DNA of 64,000 nucleotides, taken from the IMG/VR virus record IMGVR_UViG_3300044701_002789, positions 194,363 through 258,362 of that record, one strand, 5' to 3'. Position 1 is the stretch's first letter. Each line of letters begins with the position of its first letter. A program made the translations under genes and the position numbers. Below, in pieces: positions 14,091 through 25,747 of this stretch. The notes beneath the pieces are model-generated. The model saw nothing but the letters and a program-made list of their open reading frames with translations, had not been told where the DNA came from and did not search any database.

Positions 14091-15572
14091 TCAGTCGGTG
14101 TCAAAGAAAAACATTTGCCATAGTCGTCCATTGTCCATAACTGTCCCAAAGTATTGAGAAGCACTATGAATACAACTTGCATCAAAGATAACCAGACGAT
14201 TATAAACATTTCCTAGAACATCAACAGGTTCAAATGGGGTTCCATCTAAATGACACCCTCCAGGAACATCAATCCACGCATCATTCCATCCTTCCTCATA
14301 ATAAGTTCTTGCTTTTGTTTTCTTGTTAGCGTATAATGTGGTTCCACACTGATATGGTGCATTCGGTGTGAGGTACAACATACCACCCCACTTTTGATCG
14401 TCGCAATGATAAACTAAAGGTTCACCAGACCACGCAACTTGAAATCTCCCATTCATCCCATGTTCTTCCCACTTTGTTATTTTTCTTCCCATGATTTCTT
14501 CAAATTTTTCTTTGAGTCCAGGAAATAAAAATTGTTGATGAGTTCTTCTTCCAATGAATCCCCTACCCAAACCACCTTCAAGATAGTCTTGTTTTAATGC
14601 AAACTCTCTTACTTCATCTGGGTTCTCATAAAAGTTATCTATAATCCAAGAAGTTGATTTGGAGTTAATATTAATATTAAATAGATTTTCTTGTTTAGGA
14701 AGCAAGAAATTTCTTACATTTGGCAAATTGAAGATAATTTGTGGTAACAGATTAACTGGATAATTTTTTTGACTTAGTTTACTAGTTTGTTCTACTTCAA
14801 TAATATCTTTCATAGATTCTGAACTTAAAGTATTAAGGTTGGAAAGATTATCGGATAAAACAGTAGTTTTTGCTTTATATTTTCTTAAAGTTTCATCTCC
14901 CATCCAAGTAAAATGCCACCCACAGTCTTCAATTATTTTTCCATTTTCAGTAATCCAAACCGGATCCAATGGACTACCATATTGTCCCCTGAATTTTGTC
15001 GGAGATCCTCCATTTGATAATTGTCTTTTAGTACACAAAAGAAGAGATTGACTCCAATCTGCCGGCACATCTCCCTCATAAAGTCTTTTATTCGCTTGAC
15101 CTTCTAAAAGAACTAAAGGAACTTTAATGATATTGTTTGGAATATTTCTACAACATGTTGAAAAATATAGAATAAATTCTGGATTGATTATTTCATCACA
15201 ATCACTTACGATAAAAACATCATCATCATCGTATTCATCTATTACAGACATTAGAGCATCTCTTTGTAATCTTTCTCTAGTCCAATTTTTAACTTGAGTT
15301 GATTTTGCTTCTAATGAATAGACATAATCAGATTCATCTGGAATTAAATCTTCACTATCCGGCACAATAGTTTCAATAACCTGAATTTTATCCTTTGGTA
15401 AATTAAGATCTTCTATTAGTTTTTTACAAATAAAATCTTTATCATCTCCATTATGTGTTTTATTTGATTCAGAGATAATAAACTTATCCACATGATCTTT
15501 TAGTAGATTAATTCTAAGTTCTAATAATTCTTTTTCAATGAAAAAAGTAAAATAATCAATAATCTTTTTCAT
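14091..15572 (-). CDS. GT17-like glycosyltransferase fused to a 2OG-Fe(II) oxygenase-like domain
   Basis: N-terminal ELLELRI..FIISES, RE..QR, SDCDEI, GWHFTW; C-terminal IDNFY, HCD, YNRLVIF, HSA, RLWQMFFF. Confidence 0.8.
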   Translation of the reverse strand: MKKIIDYFTFFIEKELLELRINLLKDHVDKFIISESNKTHNGDDKDFICKKLIEDLNLPKDKIQVIETIVPDSEDLIPDESDYVYSLEAKSTQVKNWTRERLQRDALMSVIDEYDDDDVFIVSDCDEIINPEFILYFSTCCRNIPNNIIKVPLVLLEGQANKRLYEGDVPADWSQSLLLCTKRQLSNGGSPTKFRGQYGSPLDPVWITENGKIIEDCGWHFTWMGDETLRKYKAKTTVLSDNLSNLNTLSSESMKDIIEVEQTSKLSQKNYPVNLLPQIIFNLPNVRNFLLPKQENLFNININSKSTSWIIDNFYENPDEVREFALKQDYLEGGLGRGFIGRRTHQQFLFPGLKEKFEEIMGRKITKWEEHGMNGRFQVAWSGEPLVYHCDDQKWGGMLYLTPNAPYQCGTTLYANKKTKARTYYEEGWNDAWIDVPGGCHLDGTPFEPVDVLGNVYNRLVIFDASCIHSASQYFGTVMDNGRLWQMFFFDTD

Positions 15573-16190
15573 TTAATACCACTCTGTAAATTTAATTCTA
15601 TTTTCCGAAAATACTTTTTTGTAATTTTCTATTTTATTTCTATAAACAACTAAATCATCAAAAAAATGTGGATGAAATTCAATGTAAATTTCATTAATGT
15701 ATTTAATTGTGCCAGATGATATTAATTTATCTATAATATCAAATTCGCTTCCTTCAACATCTAATTTTACAACAATAAAATCATTAATACTAGAAAATGT
15801 TTCTATAATATTTGAAAAATCTAATACCCTTACTATCTCTGTTTCTGAATTATATTTAATTGGATTCTCTTGTAATTTTTGTGGGGGATTTAATAATATA
15901 TTAGAAGACTGCCCAGTAAATGTACCAACTTCAGTTCCATCCCAAATAGTAGATTCGGATAGGTTTAAATTTACATAATCATTTTTATTAGATACACCAG
16001 CATTAAAATGAATAATATTCAATCCATCATCTAATAATTTTAAATAATTTTCTTTTGAACTAATATATGTTTTTGGATTTGGTTCAAAACAATAACATTC
16101 CCAACTAGAATCTATACCATAGATTTTAGATATTTCGTTGAACCCCTGAAACAAGTGTGTTCCGCAGTCAAAGAATTTTTTTTTTTTAAA
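15573..16190 (-). CDS. FkbM-family methyltransferase domain, out of frame with the upstream gene at an A12 tract
   Basis: Frame opens FKKKKFFDCGTHLFQG (SAM motif I) with no ATG; FEPNP, KLDVEGSEF, IEFH. Confidence 0.8.
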   Translation of the reverse strand, partial: FKKKKFFDCGTHLFQGFNEISKIYGIDSSWECYCFEPNPKTYISSKENYLKLLDDGLNIIHFNAGVSNKNDYVNLNLSESTIWDGTEVGTFTGQSSNILLNPPQKLQENPIKYNSETEIVRVLDFSNIIETFSSINDFIVVKLDVEGSEFDIIDKLISSGTIKYINEIYIEFHPHFFDDLVVYRNKIENYKKVFSENRIKFTEWY

Positions 16191-17482
16191 TTTTTATTAG
16201 TACTCTGAATTTCATTATTAATATAAACCATAAATTCACAATTATAAGTGTCAATAAAAGTATCATCAAATATTTTATCAGTTATGTCTAGTGATTTTCC
16301 CCAAGAAATATTTTGTCTGGTGCAAGACATTACCTTGTAATCGTTGAACTTAGTTAAATATGTATCTCTGAATTTTTTGAATTTTTCTCTGAAATTATAA
16401 CCTTTGAGGTGAATTTCTATTGATATAAATTTAACATTATTGAATATAAAATCTATATTTTCTTCGGTAAAAATATTATATTCACCACCTTCACAGTCAA
16501 CTTTCATATAATCAATATGATTAATTGAATATGTTGATATAAGTTCTTTAAAAGTAATGGGAATAAAACTCTTATCATTCCCAAAAACATTAATTTCATC
16601 AGTATTATTACTTACTATTCCATTATTAATATAAGTTATTGATGTATTAAAGTTATTGAATAATTTTTCGGAACAGTTTTTAACCAATGTTTTTAGTAAA
16701 TTTTTAGATGGTTCAACACAATATACTTTTTTTGGTTTTTGATCTAAAATTGATATAGTATATGCACCAACACTTGCACCAATATCCAAAACAATATCAT
16801 TTTCTTTTACATCTTTCCAAAATCTATAAACATTTTCATGTATCACTTCTCTTTCTATTGTAACAATGTCTTCTTCCGTTAGGTCTGCCCAATCAAAGTT
16901 GTTTGGATAATTAAATGTTTGACCGATTGAATTTTTTCCTAATCTAATTAAGTTTTGATTTATACTATTTTTGTGTAATTCATCAAAATTATCCCAGTAA
17001 TTTTTTGTAAGAAGATCAAATAGATTTCTACTTTCATCACCTTTACCCCACCACCAAGCTGCAACTGCTTTTTGGAATAACAATAAATGTTTTCCACTAT
17101 ACTCAGGAATGTTAATACTTTCTATTTCATTATTATGACATTGTAGACCAAGATTTGCATAGGTATAACAACTTTGCCATTCTTGGTTCTTTTCATACAA
17201 TAGAGATAAGAAATAATATGCCTCTGGTCTTTGTGGCAATAAGTTTAAGGCATTTTCTAATGTTACTTTTTCAGTATTATCTCTTGAACCTTGTAATTTA
17301 TAACAAAACGCTGATTTTAGTAAACATTCATAAGCAAGTAAATCATTTTTAGATCTTTCCGCAGTTCTTAGATAATAAGTGTGTGCGGGTGCATACTGAC
17401 CTTGTTTTTCATACCATTTCGCGAGATTATAATTATTTTCTGGATTTTCGGTATCTAGTGAAAATTTAATAAGCTCATTCAT
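16112..17482 (-). CDS. TPR domain + FkbM-family methyltransferase
   Basis: TPR-like N-terminus (PQRPEAYYFL); LDIGASVG, VEP, KVDCEGGE, IEIH. Confidence 0.85.
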   Translation of the reverse strand: MNELIKFSLDTENPENNYNLAKWYEKQGQYAPAHTYYLRTAERSKNDLLAYECLLKSAFCYKLQGSRDNTEKVTLENALNLLPQRPEAYYFLSLLYEKNQEWQSCYTYANLGLQCHNNEIESINIPEYSGKHLLLFQKAVAAWWWGKGDESRNLFDLLTKNYWDNFDELHKNSINQNLIRLGKNSIGQTFNYPNNFDWADLTEEDIVTIEREVIHENVYRFWKDVKENDIVLDIGASVGAYTISILDQKPKKVYCVEPSKNLLKTLVKNCSEKLFNNFNTSITYINNGIVSNNTDEINVFGNDKSFIPITFKELISTYSINHIDYMKVDCEGGEYNIFTEENIDFIFNNVKFISIEIHLKGYNFREKFKKFRDTYLTKFNDYKVMSCTRQNISWGKSLDITDKIFDDTFIDTYNCEFMVYINNEIQSTNKNLKKKNSLTAEHTCFRGSTKYLKSMV

Positions 17483-18452
17483 TAATAAAGTCCTCAACTA
17501 CTGATTTTGAAATTCTGAGTATATACGCTGCGTTGTCTTGCGTTCCAAATGTAATTAGAAAATCATCATTATATTCGGCCATGCCACAAGAAAATTCAAT
17601 TTTAAAATTTAAAAATGAAAATAACTTTGATACTTTTTGAAGTTTAAAATTCTTATCCCATATAACAAACCGATGACGATAAGTTGCATCTTTTCTACCT
17701 TGTTCTGAATTATAAAGTTCTGTTTCATGGAGAAGAGAAAGATATCCATTTTGATATGGAATAACTTGTGAACCACCTCTTAAATCATTTTTTAATTCTG
17801 TAGTGTAAGGACTTGTTTCAATTATTGTGGAATCTTTTCCTGTAATATCAAATTTCAATAATGCAGTTGGATTAGTCCATTTTAAAAGATGAAAAGGTTT
17901 ATCTTCAATTGGAGTACAATTTTTCATACAATATTCATCATCTGGTGGAGGACCTGGAATTCTATATCTAGAAACTTCTTTAACTTCAGAACCATTGAAC
18001 CTCAATTCAGAAAGTTCCATTCTTCCAGTTCCAATAGTGTCTACATCTCTGCGTACACCTATAGCGTAAATCTTACCGTTCCATTGAATCAAACGAACAT
18101 CTTCCAACCCAACAAATTCCCATTGTGGTTGATAAGTATCAAAATTTGATGTATCTATTTTTGAGTAATGGAGTATATTTAAATCTTCATCTAATTCTGC
18201 AATATGATTTGCAGTTCTGAGGTGCATATCATTCTCTGGGTGTATGTAGGATAATGGTCCCCACATATGTTCAAATTTATTTAATTCCGAATGATATAAT
18301 GTGTAATTTACATTTCTGATATTGACTAATATTCTTCCATCAACTACTAAAACTGATGGATTTGTGAGAGAAGGTCCACAGAGATCTTCGGGATTTATGA
18401 GAAGTGGTTTAATAATGCCACCATTATCTAATGCAAGTTTTACAAAATTCAT
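17475..18452 (-). CDS. five-bladed beta-propeller glycosidase/phosphorylase-like protein (GH130-like)
   Basis: NPSV, GLEDVRL, KNCTP, LRGGSQ and EFSCG motifs. Confidence 0.7.
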   Translation of the reverse strand: MNFVKLALDNGGIIKPLLINPEDLCGPSLTNPSVLVVDGRILVNIRNVNYTLYHSELNKFEHMWGPLSYIHPENDMHLRTANHIAELDEDLNILHYSKIDTSNFDTYQPQWEFVGLEDVRLIQWNGKIYAIGVRRDVDTIGTGRMELSELRFNGSEVKEVSRYRIPGPPPDDEYCMKNCTPIEDKPFHLLKWTNPTALLKFDITGKDSTIIETSPYTTELKNDLRGGSQVIPYQNGYLSLLHETELYNSEQGRKDATYRHRFVIWDKNFKLQKVSKLFSFLNFKIEFSCGMAEYNDDFLITFGTQDNAAYILRISKSVVEDFINE

Positions 18453-18479
18453 AATACTATAACGAGTTCTTGAATGTAT

Positions 18480-18830
18480 TTATTCTGGTTTAATGGGCCA
18501 AATAATTTCTCTAGGAAATTTTGATTGTTGAGGAATATCTAAAAGTAATTGTCTATATTCAGTCCAATTGTCTTTTTCTTCTTGAGTAAAAGAATTCCAA
18601 CGAATAACATTTATTGTATCAATGTAAATTGAAAGATACTTATTTCTTCGGATTCTTTGTTTTTGGCACCATTCCTCATAGGTCATCCATCCATTTTCAT
18701 TCCAAAACCATCCAATTTCTCCGTCGTTTTGTGGAGTAGAAATAAGTTCTTCTGTATCAGTCCAAGATTGGTCGTATAGAATATCTACACATTCTCTTGT
18801 ATTCTTATTAATGACACATATTTTATTCAT
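18480..18830 (-). CDS. tail fibre assembly chaperone-like protein
   Basis: R.RRN..L ... W..YRQ.L.DIPQQ..FP..I.WP.KP; immediately follows a fibre gene. Confidence 0.85.
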   Translation of the reverse strand: MNKICVINKNTRECVDILYDQSWTDTEELISTPQNDGEIGWFWNENGWMTYEEWCQKQRIRRNKYLSIYIDTINVIRWNSFTQEEKDNWTEYRQLLLDIPQQSKFPREIIWPIKPE

Positions 18831-18842
18831 TTATTTTACTCC

Positions 18843-20297
18843 TTATAGTTTTAAATATTCTACTATTAAAATTGTACCCGCAGCTCCGGTTCCACCAACA
18901 ACACCTGTAAGTAAATTTATATTTACTGCACCAGAACCTCCTGCACCGGGTTGTGTTGCGTTTATTCCAGCATTTGAACCTGCAGTAAATCTTACTGGTC
19001 CGTTTGCTCCGCCGCCCCAATATGATGCACCACCGTTCCCCGCAGTAACCGTATTGTTACCCACACCCAAACCGGGCAAACCATCGAGTCCAGTATGAAG
19101 AATGTCACCTCCAGTAGGAATTCCACCATTTCCACCATTAAATGCCGATGTGTTGGCTGCATAAGCACTTCCAGTTCCAAATCCACCTTCTCCACCAGTT
19201 CCGACTAAAACAATGGAATCAATTCCAGTACAGGTAAAAATTGAGTTAGATCCATTTCCACCATTTCCGCCAAGAACAGTACCTGCAGCACCTCCACCTC
19301 CAACAGTATAGGTGGCGGTTGTCCCCAATTGTGCGGCAGTTAACCATTTAATTGATGTTCCTCCTCCTCCTCCGCCTCCAGAGCAACTACCAGATGAACC
19401 ATCGGAGTCGGATCCTCCTCCTCCACCACCTCCACCAGTGACGAATACTTGAGCAATTATTGTTTTTGGATCTCTAGTAAAAGTTCCTGAACCTACTGAA
19501 TTATATCTGGTTATTTTTACTGATGATATTCCTACGCTTCCATCTACTTCCACACTCCCATCCACTTTTACATTTCCAGCAACATGGAGTTTTGAATTTA
19601 ATTGTGGATTCAATGTTCCTATACTAATAGAACCATCTAGAAATAAATTACTTGTACTCGGATTAAAACTGAATGGGGGTGATGTTGTTCTTATACTTGG
19701 CGTCTGATTTCCAGTTCCTGCAACAAACACTGGATAAAATGTCGAATTGGTAGTAGTATCAAATGCTGAAATGACATTAGATGGTCCATTTAATCCTTGA
19801 ATTCCTTGAGATCCTGTAGTTCCTTGAATTGATATTCCCTGAGTTCCTTGAATACCAAAATTACCTTGAATACCTTGAATTCCTTGAGATCCTGTAGTTC
19901 CTTGAATTGATATTCCCTGAGTTCCTTGAATACCAAAATTACCTTGAATACCTTGAATTCCTTGAGATCCTGTAGTTCCTTGAATTGATATTCCCTGAGT
20001 TCCTTGAATACCAAAATTACCTTGAATACCTTGAATTCCTTGAGATCCTGTAGTTCCTTGACGACCTTGAATACCTTGAGTTCCTTGAGATCCTGTAGAT
20101 CCTTGAGTACCTTGAATACCTTGAGTTCCTTGAGATCCTGTAGATCCTTGAGTACCTTGAATACCTTGAGTTCCTTGAGATCCTGTAGTTCCTTGACGAC
20201 CTTGAATACCCTGAGTTCCTTGAGATCCTGTAGATCCTTGAATTCCCTGAGTGCCCCTAAAACTTGAATCTAAAAATGCGGAAAGATTTACTGGCAT
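18843..20297 (-). CDS. collagen-like fibre with C-terminal glycine-rich domain
   Basis: G-X-Q triplets, ISIGT..P...LHV.G module, polyglycine-rich C-terminus. Confidence 0.85.
   Translation of the reverse strand: MPVNLSAFLDSSFRGTQGIQGSTGSQGTQGIQGRQGTTGSQGTQGIQGTQGSTGSQGTQGIQGTQGSTGSQGTQGIQGRQGTTGSQGIQGIQGNFGIQGTQGISIQGTTGSQGIQGIQGNFGIQGTQGISIQGTTGSQGIQGIQGNFGIQGTQGISIQGTTGSQGIQGLNGPSNVISAFDTTTNSTFYPVFVAGTGNQTPSIRTTSPPFSFNPSTSNLFLDGSISIGTLNPQLNSKLHVAGNVKVDGSVEVDGSVGISSVKITRYNSVGSGTFTRDPKTIIAQVFVTGGGGGGGGSDSDGSSGSCSGGGGGGGTSIKWLTAAQLGTTATYTVGGGGAAGTVLGGNGGNGSNSIFTCTGIDSIVLVGTGGEGGFGTGSAYAANTSAFNGGNGGIPTGGDILHTGLDGLPGLGVGNNTVTAGNGGASYWGGGANGPVRFTAGSNAGINATQPGAGGSGAVNINLLTGVVGGTGAAGTILIVEYLKL
19787..20258 (-). 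repeat. collagen-like coding microrepeat
   Basis: 9-bp-periodic CAAGG(A/T)NNN units; three near-exact GIQGIQGNFGIQGTQGISIQGTTGSQ blocks. Confidence 0.9.
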
Positions 20298-20378
20298 ATT
20301 AAAATATTTTTAACTGTTTATTTTTTATATTATATCCCTGAACCACAAGATTTTTATGTATTATATGCGTTAAAATAT

Positions 20379-20738
20379 TTATGTGTATATTTTTATTTCT
20401 TTATAAAGAGAATTATGTGTCTCGTTAATTTCTCTTTTTATTCTTGCTCTTTCATCATTAGTAATATAAACACCTCTCGCAAGTTCTATAAATTTCTCAT
20501 CAAACACTTGAGATTTTTCCATCACTCTTAATTCATCTTCAATTTTCCAGAGTTTACGATTGATTGTAAGTAATTTTGAAACATAAGATGCATCATAAAC
20601 CTTATGTTCTTGTGCAATTTGAATAAGTTCTTGAAGTTCCTTCTTTACATATTCATTAGAAGTGTGTTGTGACTTAATGGAAAGTATAGAAATTTTATCT
20701 AAAAGTTCACCGACTGATACTGGAATTTCAATTCTCAT
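20379..20738 (-). CDS. DUF6165-like protein
   Basis: IPVSVGELLDKISIL.IK, N..LW.IED..R, F.ELAR.VY..ND.R..IK..IN; family usually sits beside glycosyltransferases. Confidence 0.8.
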   Translation of the reverse strand: MRIEIPVSVGELLDKISILSIKSQHTSNEYVKKELQELIQIAQEHKVYDASYVSKLLTINRKLWKIEDELRVMEKSQVFDEKFIELARGVYITNDERARIKREINETHNSLYKEIKIYT

Positions 20739-22284
20739 TTGTAGTATTATAAAGATTTAAAATTGCATCAGTTCTTTCTTTGAGATTTATTGTTTCTTGT
20801 GAAAATCCAGATGCAAATATAATGATATTTGGATTTTGTGTGAGTTTTCCAATGTTTAATAGATGAGTAAATGCCTTACCCATTAAATGACCACCAAGGT
20901 TCATTGCTTCACTTAATGCGTGAAATGCATAATTAGATGCTCTTGAAATATCTTGAAGTTGTATGAGACAAATACTCGTCATAATAAACACATCAACTCT
21001 TGTCGGGTCAAAATAAGGTTTAGACATATTCAAATATTCTTGACCCAATTCAACTGCTTTTTGAATGTTTTGAACTTGATAATAATGTTTAAATATAAAC
21101 CAGAGATAATAAATGTTTTGATACTGTTCATACTCTCTTTCACAAATTGAAAGATAGAATAATTCCTTATCTATTGTATTATGAATATTTTTTGTAATCT
21201 TAATTGTGGTATCTACTGCAACTTCATTTAGATAATCTTTTGTTGGAATAAACATTGGAGTTTCATGAACTGAATTCACCCAGGTATAATTCTTGGTTCG
21301 GTGAAAGCGAATATGTGAAGTTTGACCCAAGGTTGGTTCATTGTCTCCTTCTTTATCATATCGTTCGTGTCTAAATGCAGTGAATTCATTTGAGATTACT
21401 TCAAGACCTTCTGGAAAGAAATCATCTAAATCTTCATTAAAATCCAATGAAAATGCCCAGTCAGTTTTTACATAAGATAATGCTTGATTTCTTGCGATTG
21501 AGAAATCAAACTCTTCTCTGGTTTGTGAGTGTTGATGAACTTCAATTCCCGCTTCTTGCAGTAGTTCTACTGTTTTATCAGTACTTCCGGTATCAACTAC
21601 AACAGTGTGAGTGAATTTCTTTGAGTTCTCAATGAACTTTTGAATATTCTTTTCTTCGTTTTTGCAAATTGCATATAATGTAATTTCCATTTTATCTCCT
21701 TGTTTTTGATGTAACCAAACTTTACTTAATGTACAATCTCCACGATTAAGAAGAACTACAGATTTACCTGTAAAATATTCATTAACTGCTTGAATAACTC
21801 CATTCCAACTAATTACATAATCATCGCCGGTAATAAAACCTCCCGGTTTGACCTTTGGATACCATGCAATAATGTCTGCAAGAACATTTTCATAATCGTG
21901 AGATGCATCAATATGAACAAAATCAAGACTATTATCTTCAAACTGTTTTGCTGCCTCAATACTTGTGGTTTGTAATGGTATTACATAATTACTTACACCA
22001 CATTGTTCAAGATTATATTTAAATGCATCAAATAAAGTAAAATTCTGTGTCTTTAATCTATTTAATGCTTCTTTATGAGCATCTTCATCACTACCTTCCC
22101 AAGTATCTACTGCATAAAACTTGATGTTTTTATTTGAGTTCTTAATCTGTTCTCCCATATAACAAGTTGATTGCCCCATCCAAGAACCCACTTCTACGAA
22201 AGTTGAGTTATCTGGGCAGTATTTGATTGCTAAATCATAAAGATTAGTATAAGAAAAATAACCCTCAATGTCTTTCCAATTCAT
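20728..22284 (-). CDS. class I SAM methyltransferase + GT2-like glycosyltransferase + TPR-like fusion
   Basis: VEVGSWMG, DTW, HIDASH, GDDY; then ICKNEE, VDTGSTD, FS.ARN.AL, HE. Confidence 0.85.
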   Translation of the reverse strand: MNWKDIEGYFSYTNLYDLAIKYCPDNSTFVEVGSWMGQSTCYMGEQIKNSNKNIKFYAVDTWEGSDEDAHKEALNRLKTQNFTLFDAFKYNLEQCGVSNYVIPLQTTSIEAAKQFEDNSLDFVHIDASHDYENVLADIIAWYPKVKPGGFITGDDYVISWNGVIQAVNEYFTGKSVVLLNRGDCTLSKVWLHQKQGDKMEITLYAICKNEEKNIQKFIENSKKFTHTVVVDTGSTDKTVELLQEAGIEVHQHSQTREEFDFSIARNQALSYVKTDWAFSLDFNEDLDDFFPEGLEVISNEFTAFRHERYDKEGDNEPTLGQTSHIRFHRTKNYTWVNSVHETPMFIPTKDYLNEVAVDTTIKITKNIHNTIDKELFYLSICEREYEQYQNIYYLWFIFKHYYQVQNIQKAVELGQEYLNMSKPYFDPTRVDVFIMTSICLIQLQDISRASNYAFHALSEAMNLGGHLMGKAFTHLLNIGKLTQNPNIIIFASGFSQETINLKERTDAILNLYNTTNEN

Positions 22285-22979
22285 AAGTATTTTTTCCAAT
22301 CAATACAAGGTGATAAGAGGTCTGCTTCGCAATGTGTAGAATAACCAGGAATGGAAGATATTAATACTCTTCCATTTTGTGATAGTTCTATAAATTTTGA
22401 ATGGTCTGTTGATGGTTCTACATCTGTTGAATGTTTGATATGAGTATCAAAATCATTCATTAAAGTTGAATATTCAACCGCAAAAGTATTTGTAGTTGAA
22501 GGGGTCGCCATCCAATGAGATGAGTTGGTATGAAGAACCTTGGTTCTAAAATCTCTGTAGAACTCCATGTATTTATCTCTATGGTCATATAGGGTTACAT
22601 AATCTGCATAAAGTTCAAAACCCTCTAAAAGAATTTTATCCCAACCTGGACGATGAATATAGTCATCTTCTAAAAAGTAAATGATTTCTCCTTTACGATG
22701 AACAGTATTTTTAACAAGATTTAGAGTTTCAATAAAACTCTTTGCTTCTCCACCAGAGTTAATAATATGAACTTTTTCTTCTTGGGATAAAAAGGTGTCT
22801 TCAATCTTACCGTAATATTCATCATACACAATAGTGTAATTGGTGGTTTCTGGATTTAAAGTGTTCTTAAAATTTTGAAAAACCTTTTCTTTACTCCACC
22901 ACTTTGGTCTTTGTTTTCCGGGAGTTTCTTGTATTTTAGACTGATAACAGTGTCTTAAATAAACATTAATTTTTTTCAT
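22281..22979 (-). CDS. GT-A fold glycosyltransferase-like protein
   Basis: YFLEDDYIH motif; IPGYSTH. Confidence 0.75.
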   Translation of the reverse strand: MKKINVYLRHCYQSKIQETPGKQRPKWWSKEKVFQNFKNTLNPETTNYTIVYDEYYGKIEDTFLSQEEKVHIINSGGEAKSFIETLNLVKNTVHRKGEIIYFLEDDYIHRPGWDKILLEGFELYADYVTLYDHRDKYMEFYRDFRTKVLHTNSSHWMATPSTTNTFAVEYSTLMNDFDTHIKHSTDVEPSTDHSKFIELSQNGRVLISSIPGYSTHCEADLLSPCIDWKKYL

Positions 22980-23769
22980 TGAGTTTCTCCAAATCATATT
23001 CATTCCACCAGGATTTCCAATCAATAAAGAAATCTTTATCCCAATCTGTTTGCATATGTAATGCTAACGATGGAATTGGATTAAAACAGTAGTATCCTCT
23101 TTCATAATAAATTCGGTCAATACTTTCCATTTCCATTACTGGTGAGACTTCACTGGTTCCCATCTTGTAGAATAAATCCCAGTTCTTTTCTATTATACTC
23201 ACATGGGTCATTAAAGTAAATGCAGGATGAATATTTGTTCTCCAGTATCTGTCTTTGCCGACAACGATGTTACAAGGTACTGCAGTGTTTTGTGGGTCGT
23301 GATATTCTGCAGGTTTGTTAAAAGGAAAGATACTTGCAGGAGCACCTAAATTACAACTGAATTGATTGATTGCGTGTATCATCAGTTCAATTGAATTCTT
23401 TTGATGAAGAAAATCATCTTGAACAAAATAAACCCAATCTCTTCCAAATGATTTTCCATACTCATAACATCTCAAAATAGAAGGCATAATACCATAAGTT
23501 TCAAGATGTGTTAGGTTAATCTTGAATTTTGCAATATTGATTAATTTTTGAAGAATATCTAAGAATTCTTGAGATGAATGGTCATCAAAAATTTGCAGTT
23601 GTATTTCATAATCAGGATATTTTTCTTGAGCAAAATTCAAACTATCAATTAAAGAAAATACACAATGAGATGATACTTCTATCTTTGGTGCATTGCAGTA
23701 TCTTGTTTGACTATCATCCCGATTTCCTTTTGAGTGAGTTTGCAAAACAACTAACAAATGAGTTTTCAT
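22966..23769 (-). CDS. GT-A fold glycosyltransferase-like protein
   Basis: DDHS, YFVQDDFLH, PIPSLALH. Confidence 0.7.
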   Translation of the reverse strand: MKTHLLVVLQTHSKGNRDDSQTRYCNAPKIEVSSHCVFSLIDSLNFAQEKYPDYEIQLQIFDDHSSQEFLDILQKLINIAKFKINLTHLETYGIMPSILRCYEYGKSFGRDWVYFVQDDFLHQKNSIELMIHAINQFSCNLGAPASIFPFNKPAEYHDPQNTAVPCNIVVGKDRYWRTNIHPAFTLMTHVSIIEKNWDLFYKMGTSEVSPVMEMESIDRIYYERGYYCFNPIPSLALHMQTDWDKDFFIDWKSWWNEYDLEKLNEKN

Positions 23770-24548
23770 ATATCAAATTTGGAATATAGTTTCATATTTT
23801 CTTCTCCTATAATTTCTATAGGGTCTTGTGAGATTTTAGAAAGATTTGGACGAATAGTGTGAAGGTCTTTCAGTCCCCATGCCTCATCTTTTTCTTCTCC
23901 ACAAGCATTTTCAATATTGTGAAAAGTATTTGTGTGAGATGTAACTTCTAAAAACTCATAGATTTTATTGAGTTCTTGTTGTGGATTGTTTAGTAGTTGA
24001 TTGTATTCTACCAGATGAACCCACTCCGGATATTTATTCAGTCCATAAATCATACTCTCATAAGAAGGAGAAACATAATATCTCCAAATGTATTCTGCAC
24101 GATTGTTATTTGTAATGGAAAGATTATCTTTTTTTAAGTGATTATCAATAAAGTTATCTTGATGTCCTGTTCTTTCTATGAGGGAGATATAGGAAGTAAG
24201 AACTTCTGGAATGGGACGATAAGTTGCGACAATCTTGGGTTTGTTTGATAAGAACATTTGTACTGTATCAAGGTTCTTGCCCCAAAATCTATGTTTGTCT
24301 AATATGATTGATTTTGGAATATGATTATAGAAATTTGCAAGAACTGACTTATAGACATTATAAGAGATTGATTTGCGGTCAAAGGTGAATTGTTGGTCTA
24401 TACGATTAAAAGATTTCTCAATATCAGTCACTACATCTCCTAATGGTGATGTAGGAGATACATAAATTTCTGGATGTTGATTGAGAATTGAACCTAATAA
24501 TGTTGAACCACTTCTTGGAAGTCCTCCAAGAAAATATAAAGTTTTCAT
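23766..24548 (-). CDS. sulfotransferase
   Basis: PAPS-binding loop GLPRSGSTLL, R...EVL.S, V.Y..L...P; start moved to MKTLYF. Confidence 0.88.
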   Translation of the reverse strand: MKTLYFLGGLPRSGSTLLGSILNQHPEIYVSPTSPLGDVVTDIEKSFNRIDQQFTFDRKSISYNVYKSVLANFYNHIPKSIILDKHRFWGKNLDTVQMFLSNKPKIVATYRPIPEVLTSYISLIERTGHQDNFIDNHLKKDNLSITNNNRAEYIWRYYVSPSYESMIYGLNKYPEWVHLVEYNQLLNNPQQELNKIYEFLEVTSHTNTFHNIENACGEEKDEAWGLKDLHTIRPNLSKISQDPIEIIGEENMKLYSKFDI

Positions 24549-24556
24549 AGTTGTTT

Positions 24557-25747
24557 TTATAATGTTGGGTCGTTGTATGTGAGTGCTACCGTATGAGTAG
24601 CTCCACCATTCACTTGTTTCCAATTAGTTCCACCGGCAAATGTAGTGATTGGAGTACTTCTGTTTCCTGTAGTTGCTCCATTTCCAAGTCGTCCACTATC
24701 TCCACTACCCCAAATCCAAAGGGTTCCATCGGTCTTGATTGCTACTATGTGATCACTTCCAGCATTCACCTGTTTCCAGGTGGTTCCTCCAGCAAATGTG
24801 GTGACTGGAGTACTTATATTTCCAGTAGTTACTCCATTTCCAAGTTCTCCAGTACTTCCAAAACCCCAAGTCCATAGAGTTCCATCAGTCTTGATTGCTG
24901 CTGTGTTTGCTCTACTAACACTCACTTGTTTCCAATTGGTTCCGCCAGCAAATGTGGTGACTGGAGTACTTCTGTCTGTGGTTGAGGCATTCCCAAGATT
25001 TCCATATTGATTTCTACCCCAAGTCCATAGAGTTCCATCGGTTTTGATTGCTGCTGTGTGAGGGGCGGCGGTGCCGCTGACAGCACTTACTTGTTTCCAA
25101 TTCTTGCCACCGGCAAATGTGGTGACTGGAGTGCTTCTATTTGTAGTTTGTGCATTTCCAAGTGATCCATTACCATTAAACCCCCAAGTCCAAAGGGTTC
25201 CATCGGTTTTGATTGCTGATATGTAATCACCACCAGCACTCACTTGTTTCCAGTTAGTTCCACCAGCAAATGTGGTGACTGGAGTGCTTCTATCTGTAGT
25301 ATTTGCATTTCCAAGTTGTCCATTAGTTCCATATCCCCAAGTCCAAAGAGTTCCATCAGTTTTGATTGCTGCCGTATTCCTACCACCAACACTCACTTGT
25401 TTCCAATTGGTTCCTCCAGCAAATGTGGTGATTGGAGTACTAAAGGTTCCAGTAGTTGCTCCATTTCCAAGTTGTCCGTATCTCCCATAACCCCAAGTCC
25501 AAAGAGTTCCATCGGTTTTGATTGCTGCTACGATAGAATTTCCGCAACTTACTTGTTTCCAATTAGTTCCACCAGCAAATGTAGTAACTGGAGTGCTTCT
25601 ATTTGTAGTTTGTGCATTTCCAAGTCTTCCATTACTTCCAAAACCCCACACCCATAAGTTTCCATCACGAAATAAATCCGCAGGAATAAAGACATCATCA
25701 AAAGAATAATCAACTCCGTCTTGTCTAAAGTTGTAAAATGTGGGCAT
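24557..25747 (-). CDS. RCC1/BLIP-II repeat beta-propeller, 7 repeats
   Basis: Seven ~51-aa units KQVSxG..HT.AIKTDGTLWTWG....GxLG. Confidence 0.92.
   Translation of the reverse strand: MPTFYNFRQDGVDYSFDDVFIPADLFRDGNLWVWGFGSNGRLGNAQTTNRSTPVTTFAGGTNWKQVSCGNSIVAAIKTDGTLWTWGYGRYGQLGNGATTGTFSTPITTFAGGTNWKQVSVGGRNTAAIKTDGTLWTWGYGTNGQLGNANTTDRSTPVTTFAGGTNWKQVSAGGDYISAIKTDGTLWTWGFNGNGSLGNAQTTNRSTPVTTFAGGKNWKQVSAVSGTAAPHTAAIKTDGTLWTWGRNQYGNLGNASTTDRSTPVTTFAGGTNWKQVSVSRANTAAIKTDGTLWTWGFGSTGELGNGVTTGNISTPVTTFAGGTTWKQVNAGSDHIVAIKTDGTLWIWGSGDSGRLGNGATTGNRSTPITTFAGGTNWKQVNGGATHTVALTYNDPTL

What the first reader, a model, noticed from the sequence alone, without database searches (positions are those of the whole stretch)
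16150..16200. A12 tract / T-TTA-AAA slippery site splits a TPR-FkbM-FkbM fusion
Seen: on the minus strand, AAT TTA AAA AAA AAA AAT TCT (12 A, 16176-16187). The -1 frame continues ...KKFFDCGTHLFQG, the SAM-binding motif I of the second methyltransferase. That frame has a stop just upstream and no start codon before the motif; the track's TTG start falls after it. One extra A or a -1 shift yields a 636-aa fusion. Known: X XXY YYZ heptamers drive -1 frameshifting, and long A tracts cause polymerase slippage and phase variation of glycan-modifying genes. Inference: an ON/OFF or ratio switch for one glycan methylation.
Basis: partly seen in the sequence, partly recalled or inferred. Interest (0 to 1): 0.7.

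Follow-up and report, generated by a model that had tools for sequence, protein, structure and literature searches.

The report
Slippery poly(A) switch in cyanophage methyltransferase
A run of twelve A's, the only long homopolymer in this 258-kb freshwater cyanophage, splits a two-methyltransferase fusion gene; in closely related phages this linker run varies in length and flips the second domain in and out of frame.

Summary
A12 lies at 16176-16187 on the minus strand. The 0 frame ends a TPR-FkbM protein 21 codons later. The -1 frame holds an intact second FkbM domain with no usable start codon. A13 would give a 636-aa fusion.

The tract is probably not an assembly error. Three IMG/VR contigs and Logan contigs from four runs all read A12. 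It is the only homopolymer of 9 nt or more in the genome.

Relatives decide the interpretation. Many encode one in-frame 632-663-aa TPR-FkbM-FkbM protein. Others are frameshifted at a poly(A) run in the same linker, and all keep a full-length second domain. Near-identical strains differ only in tract length:
- A11 (out of frame) versus A12 (in frame) at 99.7% nucleotide identity.
- A10 versus A12, both out of frame, at 99.86% identity.

The second domain shows no relaxed selection in the three frameshifted lineages tested (dN/dS 0.13-0.17).

Best reading: a hypermutable contingency tract that toggles the second methyltransferase domain. This phage carries the "one A short" allele. RNA polymerase or ribosome slippage on A12 probably leaks some full-length protein. 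A structured -1 frameshift signal is not supported. Tract heterogeneity within this phage's own population could not be tested.

The parts
16176..16187 (-). A12 homopolymer (T12 on the + strand) in the Lys-rich linker between the two methyltransferase domains. This is the slippery, hypermutable tract, one A short of the in-frame length.
   Evidence: It is the only homopolymer of 9 nt or more in 258,362 bp, and it reads the same in 3 IMG/VR contigs and in Logan contigs from 4 runs.
16112..17482 (-). ORF A, the genome-encoded product: TPR-like N-terminal region plus FkbM methyltransferase 1 plus a 21-residue out-of-frame tail. It is 456 aa from ATG 17482, or 461 aa from TTG 17497.
   Evidence: PF05050 at 36.5 bits, residues 238-381; TPR hits below the cut-off at residues 13-104.
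16355..16786 (-). FkbM domain 1 (extent of the Pfam PF05050 match).
16112..16175 (-). Out-of-frame tail of ORF A (NSLTAEHTCFRGSTKYLKSMV plus the stop). The same DNA in the -1 frame encodes motif I of domain 2.
   Evidence: A homologous tail, NSLTVEH...KYLKSII*, occurs in the frameshifted relative L081.
15573..16193 (-). -1 frame that is open from stop to stop: KFKKKK followed by a complete FkbM methyltransferase 2 (about 200 codons), with no start codon ahead of motif I.
   Evidence: PF05050 at 44.7 bits, profile positions 1-161. Full length compared with relatives. dN/dS 0.13.
16143..16175 (-). Motif I of domain 2 (FFDCGTHLFQG), the glycine-rich loop predicted to bind SAM.
   Evidence: In the standalone homologues listed (about 190-205 aa), the match typically starts 2-4 residues from their N-terminus, just before this motif.
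16152..16154 (-). The TTG that gene callers use as the start of a 193-aa 'ORF B'. It lies inside motif I, so it would give a truncated domain.
16194..16199 (-). Two stop codons (TAA TAA) that close the -1 frame immediately upstream of the tract.
14091..15572 (-). Downstream neighbour: GT17-like glycosyltransferase with a DUF6445 region. Its ATG abuts the stop of domain 2. Syntenic in relatives.
17475..18452 (-). Upstream neighbour: a conserved 325-aa protein, with only a faint GH130-like hit on record for a relative. Syntenic in relatives.

Best explanation
The locus is a single TPR-FkbM-FkbM methyltransferase gene of a T4-like freshwater cyanophage. Its Lys-rich interdomain linker is encoded by a hypermutable poly(A) tract that behaves as a contingency (phase-variation) locus. 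Slippage during DNA replication changes the tract length. In-frame lengths give the bifunctional 630-660-aa enzyme. Out-of-frame lengths give only TPR-FkbM1 and silence FkbM2.

This phage carries an out-of-frame allele (A12, one A short of in-frame A13) as its majority genotype. Its main product is therefore the 456-aa TPR-FkbM1 with a short junk tail.

Inferred, not shown: because A12 exceeds the lengths at which bacterial RNA polymerase and ribosomes slip (A9-A11 in published systems), a minority of transcripts or translations should restore the frame and leak some full-length enzyme. Revertant A13 genomes should also arise at high frequency. Either route would keep FkbM2 under selection. 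The presumed output is presence or absence (or dosage) of one methyl mark on a glycan made by the surrounding glycosyltransferase, sulfotransferase and methyltransferase island. The substrate is unknown.
For: 1. Anatomy. A12 sits at the domain junction. Domain 2 is intact but has no start codon, and Pfam places motif I at its very beginning. The standalone homologues start just before that motif.

2. The tract is probably real. Three IMG/VR contigs read A12. Logan contigs from 4 runs (at most 2 samples, 2 studies; word depth 56-82) span it with no gaps or differences. These may include the source samples, so independence is limited.

3. The tract is exceptional. It is the only homopolymer of 9 nt or more in 258 kb, against about 15 expected. 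It is the only Lys run not interrupted by AAG, 1 of 23. Two related complete or near-complete phage genomes have no A9/T9, and a third, partial one has a single run.

4. The fused form is widespread among relatives and is probably ancestral. Single in-frame ORFs of 632-670 aa occur in L051, L009, L012 and P0003-P0007.

5. Out-of-frame alleles recur at a linker poly(A) run. WIN and L081 share one run next to FFD, and L083, L092 and the L084 group carry a run earlier in the linker:
- One nt short: WIN A12, L081/L082 A9, L083 A11, L092 A13, L096 A10, L099 A16.
- One nt extra: L097/L098 A12.

6. Near-identical genomes differ only at the tract. L083 (A11, out of frame) versus L093-L095 (A12, in frame) is 99.7% identical over 3.6 kb with a single gap. 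L096 (A10) versus L097 (A12) is 99.86% identical.

7. The 90%-identity protein clusters that hold P0006 and P0012 contain both fused members and separately called pieces of split alleles. Clusters from lineages with an interrupted tract (A9GA3) or no tract hold only fused full-length members or contig-truncated fragments.

8. There is no decay of domain 2. Every out-of-frame allele keeps 197-200 codons of domain 2. Branch dN/dS for domain 2 is 0.13 (WIN), 0.13 (L081) and 0.17 (L083), against 0.13 and 0.17 for the in-frame L051 and L084. A neutral ORF would stay open with probability below 0.001 over a divergence of 0.2 or more; WIN's branch dS is 0.29.

9. Published precedent:
- A9 tracts in T2 agt act as reversible contingency loci (bioRxiv 10.1101/2025.10.21.683753).
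- The A11 tract in C. rodentium tssM1 gives about 20% frame restoration by transcriptional slippage (PMC4256274).
- Ribosomes slide on A11 or longer but little on A9-A10 (PMC4363877).
Against: No tract-length variant of this phage's own lineage was seen. All seven assemblies read A12. Logan contigs drop minority variants, and no raw reads were served. No in-frame allele closer than 79% identity exists in the protein collection.

Some of the 'independent' assemblies of relatives (JGI versus ENA) may be re-assemblies of the same reads. Very long tracts such as A16 are error-prone on Illumina, so that length may be inexact.

Six of seven out-of-frame allele types share the phase that one added A, or a -1 shift, would rescue. 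That fits RNA-level recoding at least as well as unbiased DNA slippage, although a bias toward deletions could also explain it.

No expression, protein or phenotype data exist. The substrate is unknown.
Confidence: 0.65

Rival explanations
1. Evolved programmed recoding at the RNA level. The out-of-frame allele would be the functional design. RNA polymerase adds one A on the T12 template, or ribosomes shift -1 on A_AAA_AAA or T_TTA_AAA, giving a fixed ratio of short TPR-FkbM1 to long TPR-FkbM1-FkbM2. This would resemble tssM1 or dnaX. It does not exclude DNA-level switching.
For: Six of seven out-of-frame allele types are in the phase rescued by +1 A or a -1 shift. Out-of-frame alleles are the consensus of whole populations and recur across lineages about 20-45% diverged at the protein level, with domain 2 intact and dN/dS 0.13-0.17 in the three lineages tested. 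In the A-domain tree WIN and L081 are sisters (96/94), so they may share one old frameshift that has been kept. All tracts in out-of-frame alleles are 9 nt or longer. A11 gives about 20% restoration in tssM1 (PMC4256274).
Against: Many relatives are simply in frame, including A12 and A11 alleles 95-99.7% identical to out-of-frame ones. The frameshift is therefore not a conserved requirement. One allele (L097/98) is in the opposite phase. No stimulatory RNA structure is predicted downstream (z-scores -0.86 and -0.37). The T_TTA_AAA heptamer is not conserved. The B-domain tree does not support WIN+L081 as sisters. No RNA data exist.
Confidence: 0.2
2. Plain inactivating frameshift, that is gene fission or incipient pseudogenisation. 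One A was lost, FkbM2 is dead in this phage, and its intactness only reflects a very recent event.
For: The closest in-frame relatives (L051, L009) show that a fused form exists in this clade. No in-frame variant of this lineage has been seen. Relatives such as L010 do without FkbM2 altogether.
Against: Domain 2 shows dN/dS 0.13 on WIN's own branch, the same as in-frame L051. It has no stop codon in 206 codons of AT-rich sequence. The same state recurs in at least four other lineages, never with decay. An A12 tract is intrinsically reversible.
Confidence: 0.09
3. Sequencing or assembly artefact. The true tract would be in frame (A13 or A10), and the homopolymer was miscalled.
For: Homopolymers are the classic site of indel errors. 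The contigs come from metagenome assemblies. Some assemblies may share reads. Raw reads could not be inspected.
Against: A12 is recovered by two different assembly pipelines, in 3 IMG/VR contigs and in 4 runs from at most 2 samples in 2 studies, at word depth 56-82. Out-of-frame alleles occur in several other lineages and datasets, with different tract lengths and on different haplotypes. A consensus error at A9-A12 on Illumina data at this depth is uncommon (my knowledge).
Confidence: 0.05

Closest known systems
Phage contingency loci in T-even coliphages (A-tract repeats in T2 agt and T4 rIIA; Gomez, Barrick & Waters, bioRxiv 10.1101/2025.10.21.683753)
   Same: Both are T4-type myoviruses. 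Both have a poly(A) run inside a non-essential carbohydrate-modifying gene (agt is a DNA glucosyltransferase). In both, +/-1 nt changes reversibly switch the reading frame.
   Different: Here the tract is longer (A12, and A9-A16 in relatives). It is the only long tract in a genome that otherwise avoids them. It lies in an interdomain linker, so only the C-terminal domain is switched. The evidence here comes from natural lake populations, not laboratory reversion assays. No selective agent is known.
Citrobacter rodentium tssM1 A11 transcriptional frameshifting (PMC4256274)
   Same: Both have a poly(A) tract one nucleotide short of the frame of an essential C-terminal domain. In tssM1, added A's in the mRNA give a short and a full-length product at about 20%.
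   Different: In tssM1 the slippage and the need for both products were shown experimentally. Here RNA-level slippage is only inferred. Here in-frame and out-of-frame alleles also coexist among close relatives, which points to DNA-level switching as well.
Homopolymer phase variation of bacterial surface-glycan genes (for example the V. cholerae O1 poly(A) tracts in O-antigen genes, PMC3441752; Campylobacter poly-G phasome, PMC6321876)
   Same: A homopolymer tract within a glycan-biosynthesis or glycan-modification gene toggles it on and off within a population (abstracts).
   Different: The carrier is a virus, not a cell. The switch removes one domain of a fusion enzyme rather than the whole protein.
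Classical programmed -1 ribosomal frameshifting (dnaX A_AAA_AAG; phage lambda G/GT)
   Same: An X_XXY_YYZ heptamer lies in the 0 frame (T_TTA_AAA, A_AAA_AAA), and the -1 frame encodes the extension.
   Different: No downstream stimulatory structure is predicted. The heptamer and the frameshift requirement are not conserved among homologues.

Membership tests
FkbM-family methyltransferase (Pfam PF05050, Methyltransf_21), both domains | Profile match above the curated gathering score | tested here: met
   Domain 1 scores 36.5 bits and domain 2 scores 44.7 bits, against a cut-off of 22.7.
FkbM-family methyltransferase (Pfam PF05050, Methyltransf_21), both domains | N-terminal glycine-rich motif I at the start of the domain | tested here: met
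   Domain 2: FFDCGTHLFQG aligns from profile position 1, is conserved in relatives, and lies at the N-terminus of the standalone homologues. Domain 1: LDIGASVGAYT.
FkbM-family methyltransferase (Pfam PF05050, Methyltransf_21), both domains | SAM-dependent methyl transfer to a defined acceptor | not testable with these tools
   No solved homologue was found by sequence. The substrate is inferred only from neighbouring glycosyltransferase and sulfotransferase genes.
Simple-sequence-repeat contingency locus (phase variation) | A long homopolymer inside the coding sequence, exceptional for the genome | tested here: met
   A12 is the only run of 9 nt or more in 258 kb and the only uninterrupted AAA Lys run.
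Simple-sequence-repeat contingency locus (phase variation) | Tract-length variants among otherwise near-identical genomes that change the reading frame | tested here: met
   This was met in sister lineages. L083 (A11) versus L093-95 (A12) is 99.7% identical. L096 (A10) versus L097/98 (A12) is 99.86% identical. Fused and split members share 90% clusters.
Simple-sequence-repeat contingency locus (phase variation) | Tract-length heterogeneity within this phage's own population | tested here: inconclusive
   All 3 IMG/VR contigs and 4 Logan assemblies read A12. Only contigs were available, and these hide minority variants. No raw reads were served.
Simple-sequence-repeat contingency locus (phase variation) | The switched-off coding part stays intact and under selection | tested here: met
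   All out-of-frame alleles keep 197-200 codons of domain 2. Branch dN/dS is 0.13-0.17 in the three frameshifted lineages tested, equal to in-frame lineages.
Simple-sequence-repeat contingency locus (phase variation) | Measured high-frequency reversible switching, and a selective trade-off | not testable with these tools
   This needs an isolate or deep time-series reads.
Programmed -1 ribosomal frameshifting | Slippery heptamer X_XXY_YYZ in the 0 frame | tested here: met
   T_TTA_AAA and A_AAA_AAA are present. This is trivially true of any long A run.
Programmed -1 ribosomal frameshifting | Stimulatory downstream structure or other cis signal | tested here: not met
   Folding energies downstream are no better than shuffles (z-scores -0.86 and -0.37).
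Programmed -1 ribosomal frameshifting | The frameshift requirement is conserved among homologues | tested here: not met
   Many in-frame homologues exist, and one allele is in the opposite phase.
Programmed transcriptional slippage | A or T run of 9 nt or more, with the downstream ORF in the frame reached by adding one nucleotide | tested here: met
   A12 needs one more A. Six of seven out-of-frame allele types in the family share this phase.
Programmed transcriptional slippage | A heterogeneous mRNA tract length from a homogeneous DNA template | not testable with these tools
   No RNA run was listed for this sequence.

The most novel reading that the evidence does not exclude
Natural populations of T4-like cyanophages may maintain a bet-hedging switch built into an enzyme linker. 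The poly(A) length would heritably toggle a second methyltransferase domain. Because tracts of A9 or longer also slip during transcription and translation, the out-of-frame alleles would not be null. They would set a lower, length-dependent dose of the bifunctional enzyme. On this reading the phage tunes the methylation pattern of a glycan, on its own fibres or on the infected cell surface, in response to fluctuating host defence or receptor pressure. The near-universal avoidance of long homopolymers elsewhere in the genome would show that this one tract is kept by selection.
Probability: 0.3. Interest if true: 0.75.

Novelty: new member of a known kind. Interest (0 to 1): 0.6.

Why it matters
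Homopolymer contingency loci are classic in bacterial pathogens. In the papers found here, phage examples come from laboratory T-even coliphage populations (a 2025 preprint). This locus gives field evidence for a phage contingency locus. In lake metagenomes, phages that are otherwise near-identical carry A10, A11 and A12 alleles that flip one domain of a glycan-methyltransferase fusion in and out of frame. The switched domain stays under purifying selection.

The locus also has practical value:
- It offers a concrete, trackable marker (tract length) for studying bet-hedging and host-virus arms races in environmental cyanophages.
- It is a caution for annotation. Gene callers report a truncated 192-193-aa 'methyltransferase' starting inside motif I, whereas the real unit is a 630-660-aa fusion.
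- It is a natural test case for how much RNA-level slippage rescues out-of-frame alleles.

Tried and rejected
- Megablast and tblastn of the region against GenBank phages gave no close relative, only two distant Synechococcus phage hits to the TPR-FkbM1 part.
- The search for RNA runs listed none, so transcript heterogeneity could not be examined.
- Read laying returned only Logan contigs, not raw reads. A11/A12/A13 minority variants could therefore not be counted. The first, longer lay showed a spanning contig for only one run, and the shorter stretch showed all four.
- RNA folding downstream of the tract showed nothing beyond shuffled controls, so a structured -1 frameshift signal was rejected.
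- The PDB sequence search for domain 2 gave no hit.
- Independent initiation of domain 2 was considered and rejected. There is no ATG, GTG or TTG before motif I. The TTG at 16154 lies inside the motif. The standalone homologues start just before FFDCG.
- I briefly hypothesised that all out-of-frame alleles share one phase. L097/L098 are in the other phase.
- The protein search for an in-frame allele of this phage's own lineage found nothing closer than 79% identity.
A cluster-mate, L099, was used instead.
Full report
**1. Context**

The window is the last 64 kb of a 258,362-bp IMG/VR viral contig with direct terminal repeats. The genome is 35% G+C. It encodes a T4-type major capsid protein (PF07068, E = 3e-150) and psbA (PF00124). 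The sequencing runs that hold it are freshwater metagenomes. It is therefore a T4-like freshwater cyanomyovirus.

The site lies in a carbohydrate-modification island next to a collagen-like tail-fibre gene and a fibre-assembly gene. The island contains:
- a GT17-like glycosyltransferase with DUF6445;
- a conserved 325-aa protein with a faint GH130-like signal on record for a relative;
- a TylF-like methyltransferase fused to GT2;
- a second GT2;
- a sulfotransferase;
- an RCC1-repeat protein.

**2. The observation**

The minus strand reads AAT TTA AAA AAA AAA AAT TCT, with 12 A at 16176-16187.

The 0 frame is a 456-aa protein from ATG 17482 (461 aa from TTG 17497). It has below-threshold TPR hits and an FkbM domain (PF05050, 36.5 bits). 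It runs 21 codons past the tract into a junk tail and stops at 16112.

The -1 frame is closed by TAA TAA just upstream. It then reads KFKKKKFFDCGTHLFQGF... for 206 codons to 15573. It is a complete second FkbM domain (44.7 bits) whose Pfam match starts at profile position 1, on FDCG. There is no start codon before the motif. The TTG used by gene callers is the Leu inside GTHLFQG.

In a search of 1.8 billion representative proteins, the standalone homologues listed are about 190-205 aa. Their match typically starts at their residue 2-4, that is M-K-K-x-F-F-D-C-G. A product starting at the TTG would therefore lack the beginning of the fold. One extra A gives a 636-aa fusion.

**3. The tract is exceptional**

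The genome has 120 homopolymers of 7 nt, 14 of 8 nt, none of 9-11 nt, and this one of 12. Base composition alone predicts about 15 runs of 9 nt or more.

Of 23 Lys runs of 3 or more in ORFs, 22 contain an AAG that breaks the A run, although AAA makes up 69% of Lys codons. The only all-AAA run is this site.

Two related complete or near-complete phage genomes have no A9/T9, and a third, partial one has one. These phages evidently select against slippery runs, so the exception at a domain junction is meaningful.

**4. Probably not an artefact**

Three IMG/VR contigs carry A12. One of them differs from the others only by a 78-nt repeat indel in the collagen-like gene.

Logan contigs, made by a different assembler, from four runs span the tract with no gap or difference at word depth 56-82. 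The runs come from at most two samples in two studies, and these may include the source samples.

Minority variants cannot be seen in contigs. No raw reads or RNA runs were available.

**5. Relatives: the fused gene is widespread**

The syntenic gene in L051 is one 637-aa ORF (78% and 83% amino-acid identity in the two parts). Its junction is ATA AAA AAA AAG TTT TTT GAC. L009 and its group encode 632-638-aa ORFs with GTA AAA AAA AAG AAA GTA. A more distant contig, L012, has a 670-aa TPR-FkbM-FkbM.

A protein search found six clusters of full-length fusions, 632-643 aa. Other architectures lack domain 2 (L010, 978 aa) or carry it as a standalone gene with its own ATG (P0125, P0126).

**6. Relatives: the frameshift is recurrent and the tract length is polymorphic**

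The same search revealed short 'A-only' proteins whose C-termini are out-of-frame readings of the linker. DNA retrieved for them gives the allele series below. WIN and L081 share one run next to FFD. L083, L092 and the L084 group carry a run earlier in the linker.

| Frame state | Alleles |
|---|---|
| One nt short | WIN A12; L081/L082 A9; L083 A11; L092 A13; L096 A10; L099 A16 |
| One nt extra | L097/L098 A12 |
| In frame | L051 A9G; L009 group A9GA3; L084/85 A11C; L093-95 A12; L086 A7; L087 none |

Near-identical genomes differ only at the tract:
- L083 (A11, out of frame) and L093-95 (A12, in frame) are 99.7% identical over 3.6 kb with a single gap.
- L096 (A10) and L097 (A12) are 99.86% identical.

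The 90%-identity clusters that hold P0006 and P0012 contain both fused members and separately called pieces of split alleles. In the L083 lineage, split alleles occur on at least two haplotypes. Lineages with an interrupted tract or no tract contain only fused full-length members or contig-truncated fragments.

This is the signature of a hypermutable repeat that switches frame at the DNA level.

**7. The silenced domain is not decaying**

Every out-of-frame allele keeps a 197-200-codon domain 2 that ends in the conserved ...KF.EW[YF].

dN/dS for domain 2 between WIN and L051 is 0.13, and between WIN and L081 (both out of frame) it is 0.13, with dS of 0.7-0.9.

Three-taxon branch estimates for domain 2:

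| Lineage | Frame state | dN/dS |
|---|---|---|
| WIN | out of frame | 0.13 |
| L081 | out of frame | 0.13 |
| L051 | in frame | 0.13 |
| L083 | out of frame | 0.17 |
| L084 | in frame | 0.17 |

A neutral copy would stay free of stops with probability below 0.001 over a divergence of 0.2 or more, and WIN's branch dS is 0.29.

So the out-of-frame states are either short-lived (frequent switching), or domain 2 is still expressed from them, or both.

The trees point to repeated changes of frame state rather than one event, probably three or more. The A-domain tree pairs WIN with L081 (96/94), so one shared and maintained frameshift is possible there. The B-domain tree instead pairs WIN with L051 (89/89), which hints at recombination at the linker.

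**8. Mechanism**

Shown: the tract, the frames, the natural tract-length alleles, and the selection on domain 2.

Inferred from published work:
- A9 tracts in T2 agt mutate by +/-1 and revert about 1000-fold faster than a point mutation.
- Bacterial RNA polymerase adds A's on an A11 tract and restores about 20% of tssM1. E. coli RNA polymerase showed no detectable slippage on A runs shorter than 8.
- Ribosomes slide robustly on A11 but little on A9-A10.

An A12 allele should therefore leak some full-length enzyme and spawn A13 revertants.

Six of seven out-of-frame allele types are in the phase rescued by one added A or a -1 shift. That is suggestive of RNA-level rescue but is not statistically decisive.

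A classical structured -1 frameshift signal is not supported.

**9. Verdict**

It is a new, field-supported member of a known kind: a homopolymer contingency locus, recently reported for T-even coliphages. Its particular twist is that the tract sits in an interdomain linker and toggles only the second catalytic domain of a glycan-methyltransferase fusion.

Still open:
- heterogeneity within this phage's own population;
- the share of RNA-level rescue;
- the glycan and the selective pressure involved.

Noticed in passing
window 18843-20297 (-): The collagen-like (GXY repeat) tail-fibre gene differs by a 78-nt repeat-unit indel between two otherwise identical IMG/VR contigs of this phage. This is a second length-variable locus, next to the glycan island.
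   Followed up: partly
whole genome G000 (258,362 bp); window throughout: There is strong genome-wide avoidance of long homopolymers: none of 9-11 nt and only 14 of 8 nt. Lys runs are systematically broken by AAG (22 of 23). Two related complete or near-complete phage genomes have no A9/T9, and a third, partial one has one.
   Followed up: yes
window 14091-25747 (-): A carbohydrate-modification island surrounds the site. It contains a GT17-like glycosyltransferase with DUF6445, a 325-aa protein with a faint GH130-like signal, a TylF-like methyltransferase fused to GT2, a second GT2, a sulfotransferase and an RCC1-repeat protein. The substrate is unknown.
   Followed up: partly
L010 2369-5305; L051 3401-5314; L012 4001-6013: Relatives show extensive domain shuffling of the same modules. 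L010 has a 978-aa GT2/GT25-TPR-FkbM without the second FkbM. L051 has a downstream GT17-FkbM-DUF6445 fusion. L012 has a TPR-FkbM-FkbM whose second domain resembles the first.
   Followed up: partly
window 15573-17482 versus L051 and L081: Trees of domain 1 and domain 2 disagree on the window's sister lineage. Domain 1 gives L081 (96/94) and domain 2 gives L051 (89/89). This suggests recombination at or near the poly(A) linker.
   Followed up: no
L096 versus L097/L098 (relatives): Two strains 99.86% identical carry A10 and A12, both out of frame but in opposite phases. The in-frame A11 form was seen only in strains about 91% identical. Out-of-frame states may be common or even favoured in that lineage.
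   Followed up: partly
window 15570-15575 (-): The stop codon of domain 2 directly abuts the ATG of the downstream GT17-like gene (TAA ATG). The frame state of the tract could therefore also affect translation of the next gene if the two are coupled. This was not tested.
   Followed up: no
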